A program made the position numbers and the translations under genes. A stretch of DNA of 64,000 bases, taken from positions 14,136,001 through 14,200,000 of the forward strand of contig NC_135257.1 of assembly GCF_964204865.1 (NCBI RefSeq), read 5' to 3'. This DNA comes from Styela clava. Taxonomy: Eukaryota. Below the pieces are notes generated by a model. That model did no database searches and was not told the DNA's origin. It saw only the letters and a list, made by a program, of their open reading frames with translations. This document shows positions 43,282 through 51,200 of the stretch, in pieces; position 1 is the first letter of the stretch, and each line of letters starts with the position of its first letter.

Positions 43282-44186
43282 ATGGGCGTATTTTATTATT
43301 TATTTGTTTTTTATTAATAAAATTCACAAAAAAATAAACTTTGGTATTATCTACGAATTGTACTTACCTGATGGGGAATCAAACATTACATTGTATAATA
43401 CAGTTAATACTTAAACTTAGGTATATCAGAGACTTTTTAACGGATGCAGTTCTGAGTTATGTTCGATTGTAGTACTTAATATCGATGATACATCTCAAAA
43501 TTTCCATCTTCCATTTCGAGTCATGGGAACATTTCTATGGGACCACTCTAACATCTTTTTAAGTAACAATAATTTCATATACACTATTATTCTATAATGA
43601 AAATAAAACATTTCTGTGTTTAGTCTATGGTTGGCCCAAAATGGTAGCTACACGTGGCGTGAAGAAAGTACCTCACAACTCGAGGTTGACAATAATTTCG
43701 CATATTCTTTTGAATAGACTAGGTATATATTTACGGACTGGGATATTCTTGTTTTTCGGTTGACGAAACAATAGATCATTCTCTCTTTTTGCTACGGGTT
43801 GAAAACTAAATATTCTATCATTCAATTAAGGCATAAATAGCTCTTTCATGAAATACTAGGAACGAACCTCAATTTATTCTTTTATAATAGTTTGTCATTT
43901 TCATTATTTTTTCTTCATGTAAACCCGTATGCGATTTTTATATCTGATAAACGCCTAATCCCACTTGAATATTTTGCGCGTTCATTTGTCTCTTACTTTT
44001 GCTTGGGATTAAATGATATTGTATAAGGGCAGAGTGGAATTTTTATATGAAGACAAGCGTGGTCGAAATAAACGTATAAAAAAATTCGACTCCGGCTTCA
44101 GGCTTTTCACAGTCAGAAATTCCGACTCCGACTCGACCCCCGGGAGTTCGTTATTTCTTAATTGTCGACCGTGGGGCTCTGGAACT

Positions 44187-46451
44187 ATGGCGCCTGGACT
44201 TGAAGGTGGGTTGCGTCGTGAATCGAGTCGTATTCAAGAAAGTAATTCTAGAAGAATCCTTGACAACGCTGCGCGAATTCGACGTTTGAATCGGCAGCTT
44301 GAGTCGTTGGAGAAAGATAATTACCAGGTGATTTAATTATCGCCAGACTGGTAGGTACCGGTGGCGGTTCCGTGTAAACTACTGCTGTACCGGTACCGGT
44401 ACTATACCGTACCGTACCGGTACTACCATAAGTTAGTTGTGATACGTCACTGAAGTAAATTCTAATTAAGTAATAGTAAATCATCTGGCTGATTGGTACC
44501 GGTACTGGTAATCAGACATATTTCTGTTATTTACAACTGTTTTGTCTTGTGTCATTGATCTGTGCCCCTCGATCTGTACCGGTACCGGTATATGACAAAA
44601 TGGGGTCTGGTACCGTAACTTAATTTAGTAGGGTACCACGTGCACTTTTAGTTGGCCTGGCTCAACAATTTTTGCTTATGTCATTCCTGACTACGTCACC
44701 GAAAAATTACGTCATTGCGACCTCACAGTGGTGTAATAAGCCACACCAAAGTATGCGGATGGTCGTCCAAAACGCGCAGACCATCATCCGAAATTGAGCA
44801 AGCTATTTCTCTCGTTGTTTAGTTGCAACAATCACGATATGAGAGAGATCGCCGACATTAGCGAGTTCGTTATCGGTCGCGCTGATGTCATTTCGGGCGT
44901 ACTTGTATTTTGACAAGCTTTATGACGTGATGGTGACGTCATAGCGACGTAATTTTTGGATGGCATAGTCAGGTGGAGGTTAGGAATAACATATGCAAAA
45001 TTCGTTATGCTACGCTCACTATACTTTACGCTAATATCACAATACTCTGAATACCAGTCTATCACACAAACCAACAGCGCAGTTTTTTGACTGTTTCCTT
45101 GTTTCAGGCGACTTTTTCGCTCTTGACGAGCATCTGAGCATAGAGAAACTGTTTTTATGGTTTCAGTAAGAATAGAATTTTCAAGTTCTGCGTTATCCAA
45201 TTTATTGCCCAAGTTGCACTTTCTTATCATGTCATTCACATATACAGGAGGATCCTCATACAAACTTGTCCAGTACGAAGAAAAAGGGTCCAAGATTTGG
45301 AATTGAATCTGATGAAGATAACGAAGATACAGAAGGACCAGTGAGTATATTTTTCAGTTTGTTGCAAGCAGAAAAGGATTTTTTTTACACTATGTTACTA
45401 TGAAGTACATTAAAGGCATGAATCTTTATTTGTGCCAATTGGTTTTTCTTCGAAAGCTCAAAGTTTATCACAAATCAAAAAGTTTAAAACTGAATCGAAC
45501 ATCGTAACATGTTGACTAATTTTTAGTTATACAATATTTTTTATAAAGATCATAATTCTCAAAATTAGTTAAGATTGTGAAATAGTTAATAAGTTGAGAT
45601 AGTTCATGATATTCTCTATTATGATGGGCTTTGGATACATGCATCAACAACTGTTCATGAATGTCAATAAGTATTAATTTTATCACAATAGTCCACGAAA
45701 CACTTTGGAAATGCAAAAGATTAAAATAAAGGGTTAAATGTAACGAGTACACAAGTTGCTATAGTATTGATGACAGCTTCAACTACAAGAAAAAATTTTG
45801 TTTAAATATTTCAGGCAGTCAAAAAGAAAAAGAAGACTCGAGGTGATTTTTATAAACAAAGATTCAGAAAAAATATATCCGCTTTGCTTGATGAAGAGCG
45901 CATTCGTCTGCAGGACAAGGACAAAACGAGACCAAACTATTTTGGTGCAGTAGCACCACTTTCTAAGTAAGAGTAATATTATGAGAGATTCTTTAGTCTT
46001 CGATCCCATTGTTAAATACCAGAATTTTGTTGATAGGATTTGCTCAAAAAGGCCTCACATAAACATCTTATAACAGTGTTAAAAATATTCAACAATGCTT
46101 TTTGTGAAAAATAGGTCAATTACTGGATGGTCAAATACAATTAGTGCCAATTCTCACATAACCTGTTTGTTACCTTTGTGTAAAGGAATATCATCAACAT
46201 TATAGTGATGTGATGTACGGTGTATCTAAAGTGACATAATAACGAATATTTTGGCAATTGAGTGTATGACAAGATTCTTTCGTTCTGTCAATTAATGCAA
46301 TCAATAAAATCCCAGGTTTCCTCAAAGACACTTTTGTGCAGTTTGTGGATCTTTGTCCAACTATACATGTGTGTCTTGTGGTGCAAGATATTGTTGTGTA
46401 AAGTGTCTTGGAACCCATAGAGATACACGTTGTTTGAAGTGGACTGTGTAA
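44187..46451 (+). CDS. ZNHIT1: Zinc finger HIT domain-containing protein 1 (SRCAP/SWR1 subunit, Vps71)
   Basis: Exons 44187-44327, 45248-45340, 45815-45966, 46316-46451. RRILDNAARIRRLNRQLESLEKDNYQEDPH, KKKKTRGDFYKQRFRKN, FCAVCG..YTCVSCGARYCCVKCLGTHRDTRCLKWTV*. Confidence 0.96.
44630..45050. mobile_element. Degenerate long-TIR MITE in ZNHIT1 intron 1
   Basis: TTTTGCTTATGTCATTCCTGACTAC..AAAAATTACGTC is inversely repeated as GACGTAATTTTTGG..TAGTCAGG..GGAATAACATATGCAAAA. Confidence 0.5.
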
Positions 46452-46462
46452 TCAAAAGCATA

Positions 46463-47773
46463 ATGGCACAAAGTATCATTGATCAATTGCAAGAGAAAAA
46501 CAACCAACTAGAAGAAGAAATAAAAACTTGCAGAGATTTGTTTAATAATCTAAATGAAGAGAAGGATCTAGAAAGCCATGATAATCGTAGAGCATTCATG
46601 CTGAAGGCTCAGATCTACCAGCTTGAGAGACAATGTATGCTTCTTTCACAAGCACAGTCAAGTCGTGCACAAGTATTAACTGAAATAGAAAGTCAGTTGA
46701 AGAAGATTACAGACATTTTACAACATGCAATATCTGGGAAAACTTCTGGACCAACTGTGCCTATGGATCGTCGGGAACTTATGGATTTAGTGGGAACATT
46801 ACAGAAGCTGAAAAATTCCTTGTATAAACAATCTTCTTTAGAAAGTGCTGATAGTCTTCGAATACAATCTATGATGTCGGGTAGTAAATACGCAAATTCA
46901 CAAAAGCCTGTTGACTGCTATGATGTATGTACAGGACACATAGGACATATTAATTTGAAACAAGTTGCCCATCTTGAACAAGATCTATCAGCACTGTATG
47001 GCCGGCTCTGTGGCTTGAAATATTTTTTGCATTCATCAATCGTTGATGGAAAAGCTGACAAACGAGAAGTTTTAACAAATGCTCCTTCTGCAAAATTAAC
47101 TAAGCCTGTTGTATCCAAAATACATGAAGAAACTAATCAATGTATTGAGGATTTAGCACATTGCTGCAGTGAGCTGGTATCTCTATCACTGTTGTATCCT
47201 AATGCACCTTGGCCTGTGATAAAAAGATCCAAACAGACTGAAATGACACCTGAAAAAATTATGCAAACATTTCCACCAGTTGCACAAAAAAATCGTCAGA
47301 TTCAGTCTTCAGTTAGTTCTGTCTGCAAAATGCATAATTACTTGAATCATATGAATGATTTAAAACTAAATGCAGCAGAACTACAAATTTCTTTTCACAA
47401 AGCGATTTACAAAATACAGCTGGATTATTTAAATGATCTGAGTGAATGCATTATTGAAGCATTTCATAACTCTGAAAGAAACATGTTAAAAACTGTGTGT
47501 GATCCAGTTGCTGCTATCTTGAATTCATGGTATTTATTGAAGCAAGATCAAAGTGGCGATCATCTTAAGAAATTTTTAAGTGATATGAAGCAATATGAAG
47601 GCCAGCTTAAGGCTGTTTCTGAGCTCAAAGTTACTGAAAAAAAATTAACCACTGGAGGAAGTGCTCTTTTGAACAATTTCAAAGAAGCCTTAAATTCAGC
47701 TCTCAAAAAAGTTGAAACTGAATATAAACATAAATTTGCAGATGCAGAAAGACATATTGAACATTATAAATAA
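46463..47773 (+). CDS. Uncharacterised intronless 436-aa coiled-coil protein
   Basis: 1311-nt ORF in AT-rich DNA, first ATG at 46463; heptad-rich N- and C-terminal segments; motif RRAFMLKAQIYQLERQC. Confidence 0.85.
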   Translation: MAQSIIDQLQEKNNQLEEEIKTCRDLFNNLNEEKDLESHDNRRAFMLKAQIYQLERQCMLLSQAQSSRAQVLTEIESQLKKITDILQHAISGKTSGPTVPMDRRELMDLVGTLQKLKNSLYKQSSLESADSLRIQSMMSGSKYANSQKPVDCYDVCTGHIGHINLKQVAHLEQDLSALYGRLCGLKYFLHSSIVDGKADKREVLTNAPSAKLTKPVVSKIHEETNQCIEDLAHCCSELVSLSLLYPNAPWPVIKRSKQTEMTPEKIMQTFPPVAQKNRQIQSSVSSVCKMHNYLNHMNDLKLNAAELQISFHKAIYKIQLDYLNDLSECIIEAFHNSERNMLKTVCDPVAAILNSWYLLKQDQSGDHLKKFLSDMKQYEGQLKAVSELKVTEKKLTTGGSALLNNFKEALNSALKKVETEYKHKFADAERHIEHYK

Positions 47774-48206
47774 ATCATTTCCACTCTTTCGACATTACTT
47801 ATTATACAGTTGGACAGTATACTGGTTTCACTATAAAGAAGATAGTCAGATTATGAGTTAATTTAGGCTATAATATCTATATATTGATAATAATCTGATA
47901 ATTTAATTTTAATAAAATAAGCTCTAGCACGTTGAGGTGGATAATCATGAATTATATAAGTATGTGGATGAAGATCTCATAATATGTCCACCAGACCACC
48001 ACGATATATTTTCTGCAATTAGGAAATTTTGAATAATTGGTGATTAAAATCACAATGATATTATTAGATTTTTTCATATTTCTACTCTCTACCTTAACCG
48101 CCTAGCATAACATGTATTTTACTGTTCTGCTGTTATAACTTCTTTATTTGAACATTTAGGTAAATCTTAATTTCCTAGTAAATACTACGTACATATAAAA
48201 AAAATT

Positions 48207-51200
48207 ATGGCAGAAAAAGAAGATTTGCTTTCCTCAAACAATTTCACCGAAGAAGAGCAACGATGTGCAAGTGATGCATATGATGCTTTTCTCAGAGATA
48301 AATACGATTCCTGCATCTCTGGTTTGAAAAAAATTCAGAAAAATCATCCCGGAGATTGCAAGCTTATGCATAATCGTGCTTTAGCGGAGTATTACAAATC
48401 AGGCCTAACGAAAACAGCCGATTTAAAAAAGGCATTATCTAAGGTACAGCGTTCATTCTTAGTTCGTTTTAAAGCATTTCAAAGTATATCATTTATTTGA
48501 CCATGTCCCTACTTCTTATCCAGGTTCACAAAGTGACTCAACAATCACATCAGGAGGACGATGAGATTACTGAAGAAATAACTTCGAATGAATACTCTGT
48601 TTTGCATTACAATCAGTCTTTACTTTATTATTTCCTGCATCAATACAGGTAATAGTTTTGTCTAAAATATTAAGCTAGTACTGATGTTGTCAAATGTTTA
48701 AACTTCCAATACTCATTGACTAGATTGTAAATTATGACTTATAGTTTGAGTTAGTTTGATAAAGTGTTTCTGTTCTCGTCAAACATGATAGGTCAGTCTG
48801 ACGACTTATCCCATTTTTGTTATCTTCATTCAATTTTAAATATTCAGATGTGAAAGTAGTTATCAATCAATGAATCTTTACAATTATGAATTTTAAATTG
48901 TCCTTCTGGAGATTGAACTTCCAAGCAATAATTTATATCATATATTTTCTCAGGGAGGCTCAAACATTGCTTCAAGCACTCGCAGAAAATCCAGAGGTGG
49001 CGATCAATGTCAGGGAAATATGTTTGTTACTGGTAGAAGTCTATCTCACTAATTATGAACCAGAAAAAGCAGGTTTGTTATCAAGGGTTGGACCAAGTAC
49101 GAAGGCCACGTAGGTCTGGTGCTTGGAAAAAAGATGAATAGGGAAAATAAGACGTGGATCAATTAACCACACAGGCTGTTATACAACCTGCACTTTTTTT
49201 GCATGTTGACTTCAATGGCTCTAACTGAACAGCTGTTCGGTCATTTGTCTGGATATATAGTGTCTATCTGCACTGAGATAAATATTCGTATCGAACAAAG
49301 AGAAACTTCACTTCACATTTTGTCTCCTCACTCAATTTTTATTTTGAAAATGTCATTTCAGTGTTCTGTGGGCAAGACTGATTCAAATAACTACATTTGA
49401 ACTACATTGCATATGCACAACATTAGACTTGATGACTTTGTTAAATTTAAATATGGTTCCCAGAAAAAAAAAAGGTTGAATGTTAACAGGTTTATATCAT
49501 TTTTATATTTTGATAACCGTGCTCACAATCTTCAGCCATAACCATGTTCTATATTTATTCTTTTATTTTTAGTTCGACTCATAAACAAAATTGAAGAAAC
49601 TTTTCTCAAACCTGTTTCACCTCAACAATCAAAACATGGAAACACAAATGATGGAAAAGACAAAGGTATGCTATGGGTGCTTCTCAGTCCGAAATGTAAA
49701 CAGAAACTATTTCCAGAAATTCAATTCTTTCATCTAAAGAGACTCAATGCAACTCTTCATGAAAAAATTTTCAGATTTTTTCTCTTGTATCTATCTCTAT
49801 TGTGAAGTAGTTTCCAAACAATTCTACTCAATATTTCTTTAAATGATAGCATTAGGTCATATTATATCTAATTATTAGGAATTGTGTTTTTAGTCAGTGA
49901 TTTATTGTTTTAGCAAAACCGCAGAAGATTAACATAAAGGAGATGAAAAATTTATTGCCATTGCTGAAAACACGTTGTTGCTTACAGCTGAAATCTATGA
50001 AGGTTTTTTTTTACTTTTCATCATCCGAAATACATAGATAATTTAATAGATTAAATCAAAACAATTTTGATTTGATTGTAAAGATTCATTGGTTGATAAC
50101 ATTTGCAAAAACTATATCGTCTTCTAGGAATTTTGGTCTTGGAGAGACTTGAAAACTTGGCTATGAAATCTTATATTCAATCTTTTTTGCCATATTCATT
50201 CAGATCTCGACGGCTTAATGATGACTGTTTAGTAATGAGAGAAAGGATGTCAGTATAGAATGAAGCAATCAAATATAATTAATCTAACCTTTGTATATTA
50301 CAGGCTTGTAAAAGGGAATTGAAGGCATTCACAAGTCTGGAGAGCAGTCCAGATTTCCCTGCACAAACTATACAATTTATATCTGTATTTTTGAAGAGCA
50401 ATTTTGAATTCCAGGTTGGTTTGTACACTTTTGTATGTGTTAATTAATAGTATTATGTACTCTACTATGTTGTGAAATATAACAAGGGCTGATAGTCAGA
50501 GAAATTGATATCAAACTCGGCATAAGAGAAAGCATTTTTTCAGTTCTGATAATAAACATTGAACAATAAAATAAACTTGTATTTATTTTAGCGTGGTAAT
50601 TTTCACAAAGCATATAAATTGTTGGGTAGTTCACCTCCGTCATCATCTGTCAACACTTCTTGGCTTCAAAATGGAGAATCTTTATCTACCATGTTTTACA
50701 ACAATTTAGGTTTGTATTTTATTCCATGACATTGTGTAGCAGTTGAGACTGATTTAGGGTGTTCATTCATAAATATTAAATCAAATATAAAAATCAAATG
50801 GTACAGCAGAGTGTCCATGGAGTTCAATTTTTCAACAAATTTACCTATGTTATGAAGTCAGTTCTCGATATATCTCAACCATTTTTTTTGAATTTTTAAT
50901 CAGTGTTTATTCAAATTTTTTACTTCATTTAACACAGTAGTAGGAATCAACAAATATATGAACTAATGGCTTGCAATTAGGAATATATAAACACCCTGTA
51001 GCTGTAATCCTATTTTATGGTCTTTTTAAAAAAAATGGTTTTGGCATTTTAAATCGATGATCATTTGCCGAATTTTTTCATATTTTTTTTTTTATTTAGA
51101 AAATAGGGTTTTAGTTATGAATAAAAAAATGTTTGATGAGTCATAAAAGTAATAGTCCTTAATAACTTAAGGATAACTTAATAACTAAGTATAAAAAGGC

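What the first reader, a model, noticed from the sequence alone, without database searches (positions are those of the whole stretch)
46316..46470. ZNHIT1 stop lies 11 nt from the next ATG, with an in-frame TAATG stop-start overlap
Seen: ..TGG ACT GTG TAA TCA AAA GCA TAA TG GCA... ZNHIT1 ends at 46451, and a second stop in the same frame (46461-46463) overlaps the ATG of the 436-aa ORF. There is no room for a promoter or poly(A) signal, and the only AG in the gap (46457-46458) lacks a pyrimidine tract. Known: ascidian operons can lack intercistronic DNA, and UAAUG overlaps drive termination-reinitiation in some viruses. Inference: either SL resolution leaving ZNHIT1 almost no 3' UTR, trans-splicing at the exon-4 acceptor (46315), or a true bicistronic mRNA with coupled translation.
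Basis: partly seen in the sequence, partly recalled or inferred. Interest (0 to 1): 0.75.

Follow-up and report, generated by a model that had tools for sequence, protein, structure and literature searches.

The report
Tight ZNHIT1 two-gene operon junction
In this sea-squirt genome the ZNHIT1 gene and an unnamed conserved gene lie only 11 bases apart and are copied into one RNA, which is the compact operon layout already known from ascidians rather than a new way of making two proteins.

Summary
ZNHIT1 (4 exons) stops at 46449-51. An intronless 436-aa ORF starts at 46463. A second in-frame TAA overlaps that ATG, and the only AG in the gap is 46457-58.

The genome is Styela clava-like, so it is an ascidian. 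RNA contigs from 4 of 4 runs (3 studies) splice out all three ZNHIT1 introns and run unbroken across the junction. One 1810-nt contig holds spliced ZNHIT1 plus nearly the whole ORF. Co-transcription is therefore shown.

Both coding ends sit at conserved protein termini. One distant homologue (P0005) carries an N-terminal extension that matches a frame-shifted reading of the ZNHIT1 C-terminus. This implies a stop only 8 nt before its ATG, so the tight junction looks conserved.

The layout fits the intercistron-less, spliced-leader (SL)-resolved operons known from Ciona. SL addition and ZNHIT1 3' end formation could not be tested, because only contigs were available.

The TAATG overlap is at chance level (about 0.056) and ribosomes translating ZNHIT1 never reach it. 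I found no support for reinitiation or leaky scanning.

The scan holds many unchecked first-reader notes of candidate operons elsewhere in this genome.

Verdict: an extreme but ordinary member of a known kind.

The parts
44187..44327 (+). ZNHIT1 exon 1 (CDS from ATG 44187, context gaactATGg). Transcripts begin somewhere in 44067-44186.
   Evidence: Read. Matches PDB ZNHIT1 residues 5-41, E 1.1e-7. Joint 44327/45248 is GT..AG in 4 of 4 runs, and the depth bin 43900-44066 is 0 in 4 of 4 runs.
45248..45340 (+). ZNHIT1 exon 2
   Evidence: Read. Joints on both sides are seen in 4 of 4 runs.
45815..45966 (+). ZNHIT1 exon 3
   Evidence: Read. Joint 45966/46316 (skips 349, GT..AG) is seen in 4 of 4 runs, written with cut +4 in two of them.
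46316..46451 (+). ZNHIT1 exon 4 with the zf-HIT domain, ending in the real stop TAA 46449-51
   Evidence: Pfam zf-HIT E 3.5e-10. Aligns to residues 112-154 of the 154-residue ZNHIT1 chain 8x15_L, that is, to its last residue.
46452..46462 (+). 11-nt spacer TCAAAAGCATA. It holds the only AG (46457-58, candidate SL acceptor and candidate poly(A) addition point) and the first two bases of a second in-frame TAA (46461-63) that overlaps the ATG.
   Evidence: SNP 46456 A>T in run X1 keeps the AG. No stable RNA fold here, z +1.26.
46463..47773 (+). Intronless 436-aa gene (Styela clava LOC120345713-like). It is all-helical, has no Pfam family, and belongs to a wide family of unnamed proteins. ATG context agcataATGg.
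   Evidence: 99% identical to the Styela clava protein. Single copy in G000. 241 representatives in the profile search. 26 synonymous against 8 non-synonymous variants. The start Met is aligned in 6 of 8 homologues, a seventh (P0005) has it after a 10-aa extension, and the eighth (P0003) starts 15 residues later.
47769..48055 (+). 3' region of the downstream gene. AATAAA overlaps its stop (47769-74), with further signals at 47911 and 48043. Contigs run on at lower depth to about 48009-48055.
   Evidence: signals. records 5, 13, 16, 17 and 21.

Best explanation
ZNHIT1 and the 436-aa gene form a two-gene operon of the Ciona type, that is, one without intercistronic DNA. A single promoter upstream of ZNHIT1 exon 1 drives a primary transcript that runs through both genes to poly(A) signals after 47773 (shown: co-transcription).

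The downstream gene is most likely expressed from a monocistronic mRNA made by spliced-leader trans-splicing at the only AG of the spacer (46457-58). That would give a 5' UTR of SL plus CAUA in front of a strong-context AUG (inferred).

ZNHIT1 is then translated from one of two RNAs. One option is an mRNA polyadenylated at the G of that same AG, as in Ciona, with a 7-nt 3' UTR. The other is the spliced, unresolved dicistronic RNA, which is clearly present. Under the Ciona model, a given transcript gives either the upstream or the downstream mRNA, not both.

The second TAA that overlaps the ATG plays no part.
For: 1. The organism is an ascidian. The ORF is 99% identical to a Styela clava protein.

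2. In Ciona, operons with directly abutted cistrons are the rule, and the poly(A) is added at the G of the acceptor AG. In the cases examined, 16 of 18 lack AATAAA within 40 nt. There are 1310 candidate operons, rich in single-exon genes (PMC1488885, passages and section 14; PMC2760879, passages).

3. Contigs with all three ZNHIT1 introns removed cross the junction in 4 of 4 RNA runs from 3 studies, each with far more than 31 nt on both sides. X6 record 19 (1810 nt) joins exons 1-4 to the ORF as far as 47763.

4. This is not DNA carry-over or plain unspliced precursor. Intron 2 bins are 0 in 4 of 4 runs. The intron 3 bin is 0 in 3 of 4 runs and 3.18 against 126.6 in X1.

5. Both genes are real and their ends are fixed. 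ZNHIT1 aligns to the last residue of the solved protein. The downstream Met is the conserved family start, with 26:8 synonymous to non-synonymous variants.

6. The junction appears conserved. Homologue P0005 (39-42% identical) starts MSKVDSIRRL-M. MSKVDSI is exactly what a DNA encoding C-L-K-W-T-V-stop gives in the frame the ORF uses here. The core pattern occurs at 2 of 127,966 six-frame positions of the window and at 2 of 84,056 positions of the 177 proteins on file. This implies a stop 8 nt before that ATG, with an AG formed at TAAG.

7. There is no AATAAA in exon 4 or the spacer, as in most Ciona operons.
Against: No SL was seen on the downstream gene and no poly(A) on ZNHIT1. One search lists no loose end at 46459, 46458 or 46316. 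However, 7 loose ends and 238 contig pieces were not shown, and contigs drop short tips.

I could not find the SL RNA gene of this genome. The Ciona SL motif has no array in it.

The AG at 46457-58 has the weakest pyrimidine context of the 9 nearby AGs.

A 7-nt 3' UTR with no recognisable signal is extreme.

Unresolved dicistronic cDNAs were rare in Ciona (2 clones against hundreds for operon 41). Here the dicistronic path is assembled in every run, which could mean that much of it is never resolved.

The P0005 argument is read from a protein, not from its DNA.
Confidence: 0.68

Rival explanations
1. The spliced dicistronic RNA is the mature mRNA for both proteins. After terminating ZNHIT1 at 46449-51, ribosomes, or their 40S subunits, resume at the AUG 11 nt downstream (termination-reinitiation).
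For: A spliced dicistronic RNA is assembled in 4 of 4 runs. The spacer is very short (11 nt here, an inferred 8 nt in P0005's source). The AUG has A at -3 and G at +4. The region is unstructured.
Against: The upstream ORF is 173 codons long, and reinitiation after long ORFs is inefficient without a dedicated element (general knowledge, recalled). No TGGGA core of the viral TURBS motif 1 (the element upstream of calicivirus restart sites that pairs with 18S rRNA; motif recalled) occurs in any of the 4 exons. The TAATG overlap is not the terminating stop and is at chance level. Ascidians have a well-documented alternative in SL resolution.
Confidence: 0.1
2. Ribosomes reach the downstream AUG on the dicistronic mRNA by leaky scanning, helped by an AUG-poor ZNHIT1 coding region.
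For: Only 4 ATG triplets lie in the 533 nt from the ZNHIT1 start to the ORF start, against 10.8 expected by shuffling (P 0.011). Four other coding stretches, three 533-nt chunks of the ORF itself, and the introns show ratios of 1.2-1.6. All three internal ATGs are out of frame and in weak context.
Against: With the protein held fixed and synonymous codons resampled, 4.7-5.9 out-of-frame ATGs are expected against 3 seen (P 0.20 and 0.04). The poverty therefore comes mostly from a Met-free, K/R-rich protein. The ZNHIT1 AUG is in strong context (A -3, G +4), so few ribosomes would pass it.
Confidence: 0.03
3. The downstream gene has its own promoter or SL acceptor inside ZNHIT1: a TSS in intron 3 or exon 4, or SL at the exon-4 acceptor 46315 or at the better-looking AG 46340-41. 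The bridging contigs would then only reflect read-through or overlap.
For: The AG at 46340-41 (ttttgtgcAG) and the exon-4 acceptor have better pyrimidine tracts than 46457-58. In Ciona operon 42, one SL EST used a different acceptor from the intercistron boundary.
Against: Intron 3 carries almost no RNA: 0 in 3 of 4 runs, 3.18 in X1. The exon-4 acceptor is cis-spliced to exon 3 in every bridging contig. Paired acceptors are preferentially cis-spliced (passage of PMC1488885). Use of 46342 would put a 17-codon uORF (ATG 46367) ahead of the start.
Confidence: 0.12

Closest known systems
Ciona intestinalis operons without intercistronic DNA (Satou et al. 2006, PMC1488885; Satou et al. 2008, PMC2760879)
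   Same: An ascidian host with same-strand genes directly abutted. A dicistronic RNA is detectable. There is no AATAAA near the upstream 3' end. A single-exon gene sits in the operon. An AG lies in the boundary just ahead of the downstream start.
   Different: Here the two coding regions themselves are only 11 nt apart, so the upstream 3' UTR would be at most 7 nt and the downstream 5' UTR 4 nt plus SL. The SL and the poly(A) site are not shown. The species is a stolidobranch (Styela), for which I found no paper on operons.
Caenorhabditis elegans SL1-type operons (cited in PMC1488885 as its refs 42 and 43; details recalled)
   Same: There is no intercistronic sequence, and the poly(A) site of the upstream gene abuts the trans-splice site. 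Formation of the upstream and downstream mRNAs from one transcript is thought to be mutually exclusive.
   Different: The three characterised nematode cases carry a canonical AATAAA (passage), and this junction has none. The phylum and the SL are different.
Oikopleura dioica operons (23-30 nt intercistronic, per a passage of PMC1488885)
   Same: A tunicate with a single SL used for operons and monocistronic genes, very short spacers, and no AATAAA in the upstream cistrons.
   Different: Oikopleura keeps a short intercistronic region between the mRNA ends. Here the whole CDS-to-CDS distance is shorter than that.
Viral termination-reinitiation at UAAUG/AUGA overlaps (caliciviruses, influenza B; recalled)
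   Same: A stop and a start lie within a few nucleotides on one RNA that exists in the cell.
   Different: The overlapping TAA is not the stop that ends ZNHIT1. No TURBS-like TGGGA was found. The upstream ORF is a cellular gene in an organism that resolves polycistrons by trans-splicing.

Membership tests
Ciona-type SL-resolved operon without intercistronic DNA | Two independent protein-coding genes on the same strand, less than 100 bp apart (operational definition in PMC1488885 and PMC2760879) | tested here: met
   The gap from stop to ATG is 11 nt. ZNHIT1 was confirmed. The downstream family is conserved, with its own start Met.
Ciona-type SL-resolved operon without intercistronic DNA | Transcription across the boundary (a dicistronic RNA) | tested here: met
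   Spliced contigs bridge the junction in 4 of 4 runs from 3 studies. Introns are at or near zero depth.
Ciona-type SL-resolved operon without intercistronic DNA | The downstream mRNA carries the spliced leader at an AG at the boundary | not testable with these tools
   All runs are kept as contigs only. No loose end is listed at 46459, but short tips are lost in contigs and 7 loose ends were not shown.
Ciona-type SL-resolved operon without intercistronic DNA | The upstream mRNA is polyadenylated at the G of that AG | not testable with these tools
   The same limit applies.
Ciona-type SL-resolved operon without intercistronic DNA | The host uses SL trans-splicing (an SL RNA gene is present) | tested here: inconclusive
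   The Ciona SL plus GT and the Ciona Sm motif find no gene array in G000. The one array hit is a tRNA gene array. First-reader notes of the scan mention an SL RNA gene array elsewhere, but I did not see it.
Ciona-type SL-resolved operon without intercistronic DNA | No canonical AATAAA within 40 nt of the upstream 3' end (16 of 18 Ciona cases) | tested here: met
   There is no AATAAA or ATTAAA between 46303 (intron 3) and 46519.
Termination-reinitiation (viral TURBS type) | The terminating stop of ORF1 overlaps or abuts the restart AUG | tested here: not met
   The terminating stop is 46449-51, 11 nt upstream. The TAA that overlaps the ATG is a second, unused stop.
Termination-reinitiation (viral TURBS type) | An upstream motif complementary to 18S rRNA (TGGGA core; recalled) | tested here: not met
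   0 matches in the 4 exons.
Termination-reinitiation (viral TURBS type) | The downstream ORF is translated from the dicistronic RNA | not testable with these tools
   This needs Ribo-seq, polysome data or reporters.

The most novel reading that the evidence does not exclude
ZNHIT1 has no 3' end of its own. The fully spliced dicistronic RNA is a stable mature mRNA, and the 436-aa protein is made from it by coupled termination-reinitiation across an 8-11-nt spacer that has been kept in at least two ascidian lineages. This would be a cellular chordate example of a truly bicistronic mRNA.
Probability: 0.08. Interest if true: 0.8.

Novelty: new member of a known kind. Interest (0 to 1): 0.33.

Why it matters
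Ascidian operons without intercistronic DNA have been known since 2006. How their upstream mRNAs obtain a 3' end, and whether one transcript can yield both mRNAs, was left open in that work.

This junction is about as tight as such an operon can be. Both coding ends are pinned to conserved protein termini, only 11 nt lie between them, there is one AG, and there is no poly(A) signal. Any signal for 3' end formation must therefore sit inside the ZNHIT1 coding sequence, or ZNHIT1 must be expressed from the dicistronic RNA.

That makes it a clean natural test case for the mutually-exclusive-processing model. It does not by itself change what is known.

Tried and rejected
1. TAATG as a functional stop-start overlap: rejected. 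It is not the terminating stop, and its chance expectation is about 0.056.

2. ATG depletion of ZNHIT1 as a sign of leaky scanning: it looked striking against mononucleotide shuffles (4 against 10.8, P 0.011). It largely vanished when the protein was held fixed (P 0.20 by permutation, 0.04 by codon usage).

3. RNA structure at the junction: none (z +1.26, 178 of 200 shuffles fold at least as well).

4. Hunt for the SL RNA gene. The Ciona SL plus GT with up to 2 mismatches gave 160 hits against 63 control hits. The excess was one array on C3 that proved to be tRNA genes with an upstream ATTTGCAT-containing box. A single-copy Ciona-like 16-mer followed by GT at G000:C1:7296198 is not repeated. 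A pattern of SL end plus the Ciona Sm motif gave 42 hits against 92 control hits. The SL of this genome therefore remains unknown to me.

5. Synteny in other species. The metagenome scan gave two loci (L009, L010) with a distant, intron-split homologue and no ZNHIT1 exon upstream. These are not informative for ascidians. Ten family members with long N-terminal extensions carry no zf-HIT, so no fused gene calls were found. A second protein search with P0005 added two homologues without extensions.

6. Function of the downstream protein: no Pfam family, no PDB sequence match, a low-confidence AF2 model (pLDDT 66, pTM 0.33), no fold match at E <= 0.001, and only generic coiled-coil neighbours in the Atlas.

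7. Contig depths either side of the junction are similar (for example X2 37.3 against 34.4, X4 36 against 25.6). The tool warns that contig depth cannot rank parts of a gene, so I draw nothing from this.

8. Papers. PMC2860165 is not held. Supplementary figures and tables of PMC1488885 (Fig. S3, Tables S5-S6), which list the Ciona operons and their boundaries, were not seen. They may show whether a ZNHIT1 operon or similarly short spacers exist in Ciona. Only 3 papers in the library hold both 'Styela clava' and 'trans-splicing'; I saw the listing only, with 1-2 mentions each.
Full report
**What is in the sequence.**
- ZNHIT1 ends ...TGG ACT GTG TAA at 46449-51.
- Eleven bases follow (TCAAAAGCATA).
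- ATG 46463 then opens an uninterrupted 436-codon frame that ends at 47771-73.
- A second TAA in the ZNHIT1 frame (46461-63) shares its last A with that ATG.
- The only AG of the spacer is 46457-58. Its upstream 20 nt are 35% pyrimidine, the lowest of the 9 AGs from 46314 to 46458. The three cis acceptors of the gene have 45-60%.
- No AATAAA or ATTAAA lies between 46303 (intron 3) and 46519.

**The two genes are real.**
- I read ZNHIT1 as four exons: 44187-44327, 45248-45340, 45815-45966 and 46316-46451.
- Exon 4 carries zf-HIT (E 3.5e-10). It aligns to residues 112-154 of the 154-residue ZNHIT1 chain 8x15_L (E 3.4e-20), that is, to its very last residue.
- Exon 1 aligns to residues 5-41 (E 1.1e-7).
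- The downstream ORF is 99% identical to 'uncharacterized protein LOC120345713' of Styela clava, which names the organism as an ascidian.
- It is single-copy in G000.
- Of 8 homologues, 6 start at the same Met column, P0005 has it after a 10-residue extension, and P0003 starts 15 residues later.
- Of the 34 variants that one search lists inside the ORF, 26 are synonymous and 8 are not.
- A profile of 9 members finds 241 representatives at E <= 0.001.

**RNA evidence.**
- No raw-read RNA run was on offer. Nine runs guessed to be RNA hold 0.54-0.76 of the sampled words, all kept as assembled contigs.
- I laid four of them (X1, X2, X6, X4; three studies) on 43900-48900.
- All three ZNHIT1 introns are removed at GT..AG joints in all four runs. 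The runs are therefore RNA and the exon model holds.
- In 4 of 4 runs a contig crosses the stop/ATG junction with far more than 31 nt on each side:
  - X1 record 1: exon 2 part, exon 3, then 46316-46577.
  - X2 record 8: runs to 46577.
  - X4 record 14: exons 1 (30 nt) to 4, then to 46665.
  - X6 record 19: 1810 nt, exon 1 from 44211, exons 2 and 3, then 46312-47763.
- Contig breaks fall at polymorphic sites, not at the junction.
- Intron 2 bins are 0 in 4 of 4 runs. The intron 3 bin is 0 in 3 of 4 runs and 3.18 in X1.
- The junction-spanning RNA is thus spliced RNA. It is not DNA, and it is commoner than intron-bearing precursor.
- The bin before 44067 is 0 in 4 of 4 runs, so the unit starts just upstream of ZNHIT1.
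- After the ORF, contigs go on at lower depth to about 48009-48055, past AATAAA signals at 47769 (overlapping the stop) and 47911, and in two of the four runs (X2, X4) past ATTAAA at 48043.

**Limits of the RNA evidence.**
- A contig across two genes does not prove one molecule.
- Contigs lose short dead-end tips such as a 16-nt leader or a poly(A) tail.
- No loose end is listed at 46459, 46458 or 46316, but 7 loose ends and 238 pieces were not shown.
- SL use and the ZNHIT1 3' end therefore stay untested.

**Conservation of the junction.**
- One homologue, P0005 (Logan assembly, 39-42% identical), starts MSKVDSIRRL before the conserved Met.
- In the window, the ORF's frame read backwards over the end of ZNHIT1 gives LFEVDCVIKSI-M.
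- I enumerated every DNA that encodes C-L-K-W-T-V-stop and read it in that frame. The allowed residues are [LMV][FLPS][EKQ][MV]D[CGRS][ILMV].
- MSKVDSI fits at all seven places, and P0005 is the only one of 177 proteins on file with the pattern in its first 80 residues.
- The six-residue core occurs at 2 of 127,966 six-frame positions of the window and at 2 of 84,056 positions of all proteins on file.
- The reading requires ATA followed by AGR, that is, a TAA stop 8 nt before the ATG, with an AG formed at TAAG.
- This is an inference from a protein. I could not see the DNA.
- Other routes to synteny gave nothing. Two metagenome loci hold an intron-split distant homologue with no ZNHIT1 upstream. 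There are no zf-HIT fusions among 10 extended family members. A second search found no further extensions.

**What it most likely is.** Ciona operons are defined by same-strand genes less than 100 bp apart. Where mapped, they have no intercistronic DNA at all.
- The SL is joined to the base after an AG whose G receives the upstream poly(A). This relation held at all the mapped boundaries and was seen in 41 of 55 upstream cDNAs.
- 16 of 18 lack AATAAA within 40 nt.
- Dicistronic cDNAs exist but are rare.
- The authors argue that one transcript can give only one of the two mRNAs (PMC1488885, passages and section 14).
- 1310 such candidate operons, rich in single-exon genes, were later counted (PMC2760879, passages).

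The present locus meets every feature I could test: spacing, two independent genes, a dicistronic RNA, no AATAAA, a single-exon member, and an AG just before a strong-context AUG (agcataATGg). I therefore file it as a Ciona-type operon, with SL addition at 46459 inferred. What is unusual is only the degree: the coding regions themselves are 11 nt apart. ZNHIT1 would then have a 3' UTR of at most 7 nt, or it is translated from the unresolved dicistronic RNA that is so readily assembled here.

**Rivals.**
- Termination-reinitiation. The overlapping TAA is not the terminating stop. The overlap is expected about 0.056 of the time by base composition. No TGGGA core (recalled TURBS motif) occurs in the four exons. 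There is no stable fold at the junction.
- Leaky scanning. ZNHIT1 exons hold 4 ATGs against 10.8 expected (P 0.011), while the other coding stretches tested (four others, plus three chunks of the ORF itself) and the introns show ratios of 1.2-1.6. With the protein fixed, 4.7-5.9 out-of-frame ATGs are expected against 3 seen (P 0.20 and 0.04), and the ZNHIT1 AUG is in strong context. I reject this as evidence.
- An own start inside ZNHIT1, or SL at the exon-4 acceptor. Intron 3 is nearly silent and that acceptor is cis-spliced in every bridging contig. A minor use of the better-looking AG at 46340-41 cannot be excluded.

**The SL itself.**
- The Ciona leader (printed in PMC7986045) has no gene array in this genome.
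- The apparent array on contig C3 is a tRNA gene array.
- A Ciona-like single copy on C1 is not repeated.
- A donor-plus-Sm pattern is not enriched.
- First-reader notes of the scan mention an SL RNA array and many candidate operons elsewhere in this genome. I saw titles only and tested none, except that I looked at the C15orf61-TYW3 junction in this window, which has a 90-nt gap.

**Literature.** I found no paper on operons or trans-splicing in Styela clava. Searches listed none, and one search found 3 papers holding both terms, 2 of them listed with 1-2 mentions each (listing only). The supplements of PMC1488885 that list the Ciona operon boundaries were not seen.

**Verdict.** Co-transcription is shown, the junction is probably conserved, and the mechanism is most likely ordinary ascidian operon resolution. 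It is a tidy extreme case and a good test locus, not a new kind of system.

Noticed in passing
window 46463-47773: The downstream protein belongs to an unnamed family with no Pfam domain and an all-helical prediction. The family is old and wide. Named members are all 'uncharacterized'. They occur in Ciona, amphioxus, lungfish, anchovy, starfish, Lingula, bivalves, an annelid, a rotifer, corals, a sponge, a choanoflagellate, Planoprotostelium, Piromyces and Rhodelphis. That spread over flagellated lineages hints at a cilium or centriole role. The AF2 model is weak (pLDDT 66) and no fold match was found.
   Followed up: partly
G000:C3:24847563-24961794 (sample L008): A tRNA gene array of about 115 kb, with units of about 0.5-1.9 kb. 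The sample of 4.1 kb holds 13 tRNA matches. About 40 nt upstream of one tRNA type lies a conserved box ATTCTATTTGCATAAG that contains the octamer-like ATTTGCAT. It mimics the Ciona SL at 15 of 16 positions but is not an SL gene.
   Followed up: partly
window 44568-45068 (ZNHIT1 intron 1): Repeat-derived RNA is found at very high contig depth (up to 1401 in X1), with many divergent loose ends. A 153-aa antisense ORF (44832-45293) runs into exon 2 and has no Pfam family. This is probably a transposon family expressed elsewhere.
   Followed up: partly
window 47769-47779: The AATAAA of the 436-aa gene overlaps its own stop codon. In two runs (X2, X4) contigs diverge behind 47779 into 138-153 nt of other sequence, which is probably a divergent 3' UTR allele.
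   Followed up: no
window 47991-48649: CNOT10 starts at ATG 48207 (exon 1 matches PDB CNOT10 residues 22-91, E 5.9e-8), with an 80-nt intron at 48442-48521. In X1 its contig begins at 47991 and overlaps the tail of the upstream unit by 28 nt. ZNHIT1, the 436-aa gene and CNOT10 may therefore share read-through transcription. In 3 of 4 runs the bin 48075-48241 is empty.
   Followed up: partly
L001 1501-1518 (G000:C1:7296198): A single-copy 16-mer, one mismatch from the Ciona SL, is followed by GT, a possible stem and a U-rich stretch. It is not repeated anywhere in G000, so it may be a relic or a chance match.
   Followed up: partly
L009 / L010 4305-6207 (metagenome contigs WLWI01005412.1, WLWD01001110.1): An intron-split distant homologue of the 436-aa protein (three collinear pieces, 35-57% identical) lies in an unidentified eukaryote within a metagenome. 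This contrasts with the intronless ascidian gene.
   Followed up: partly
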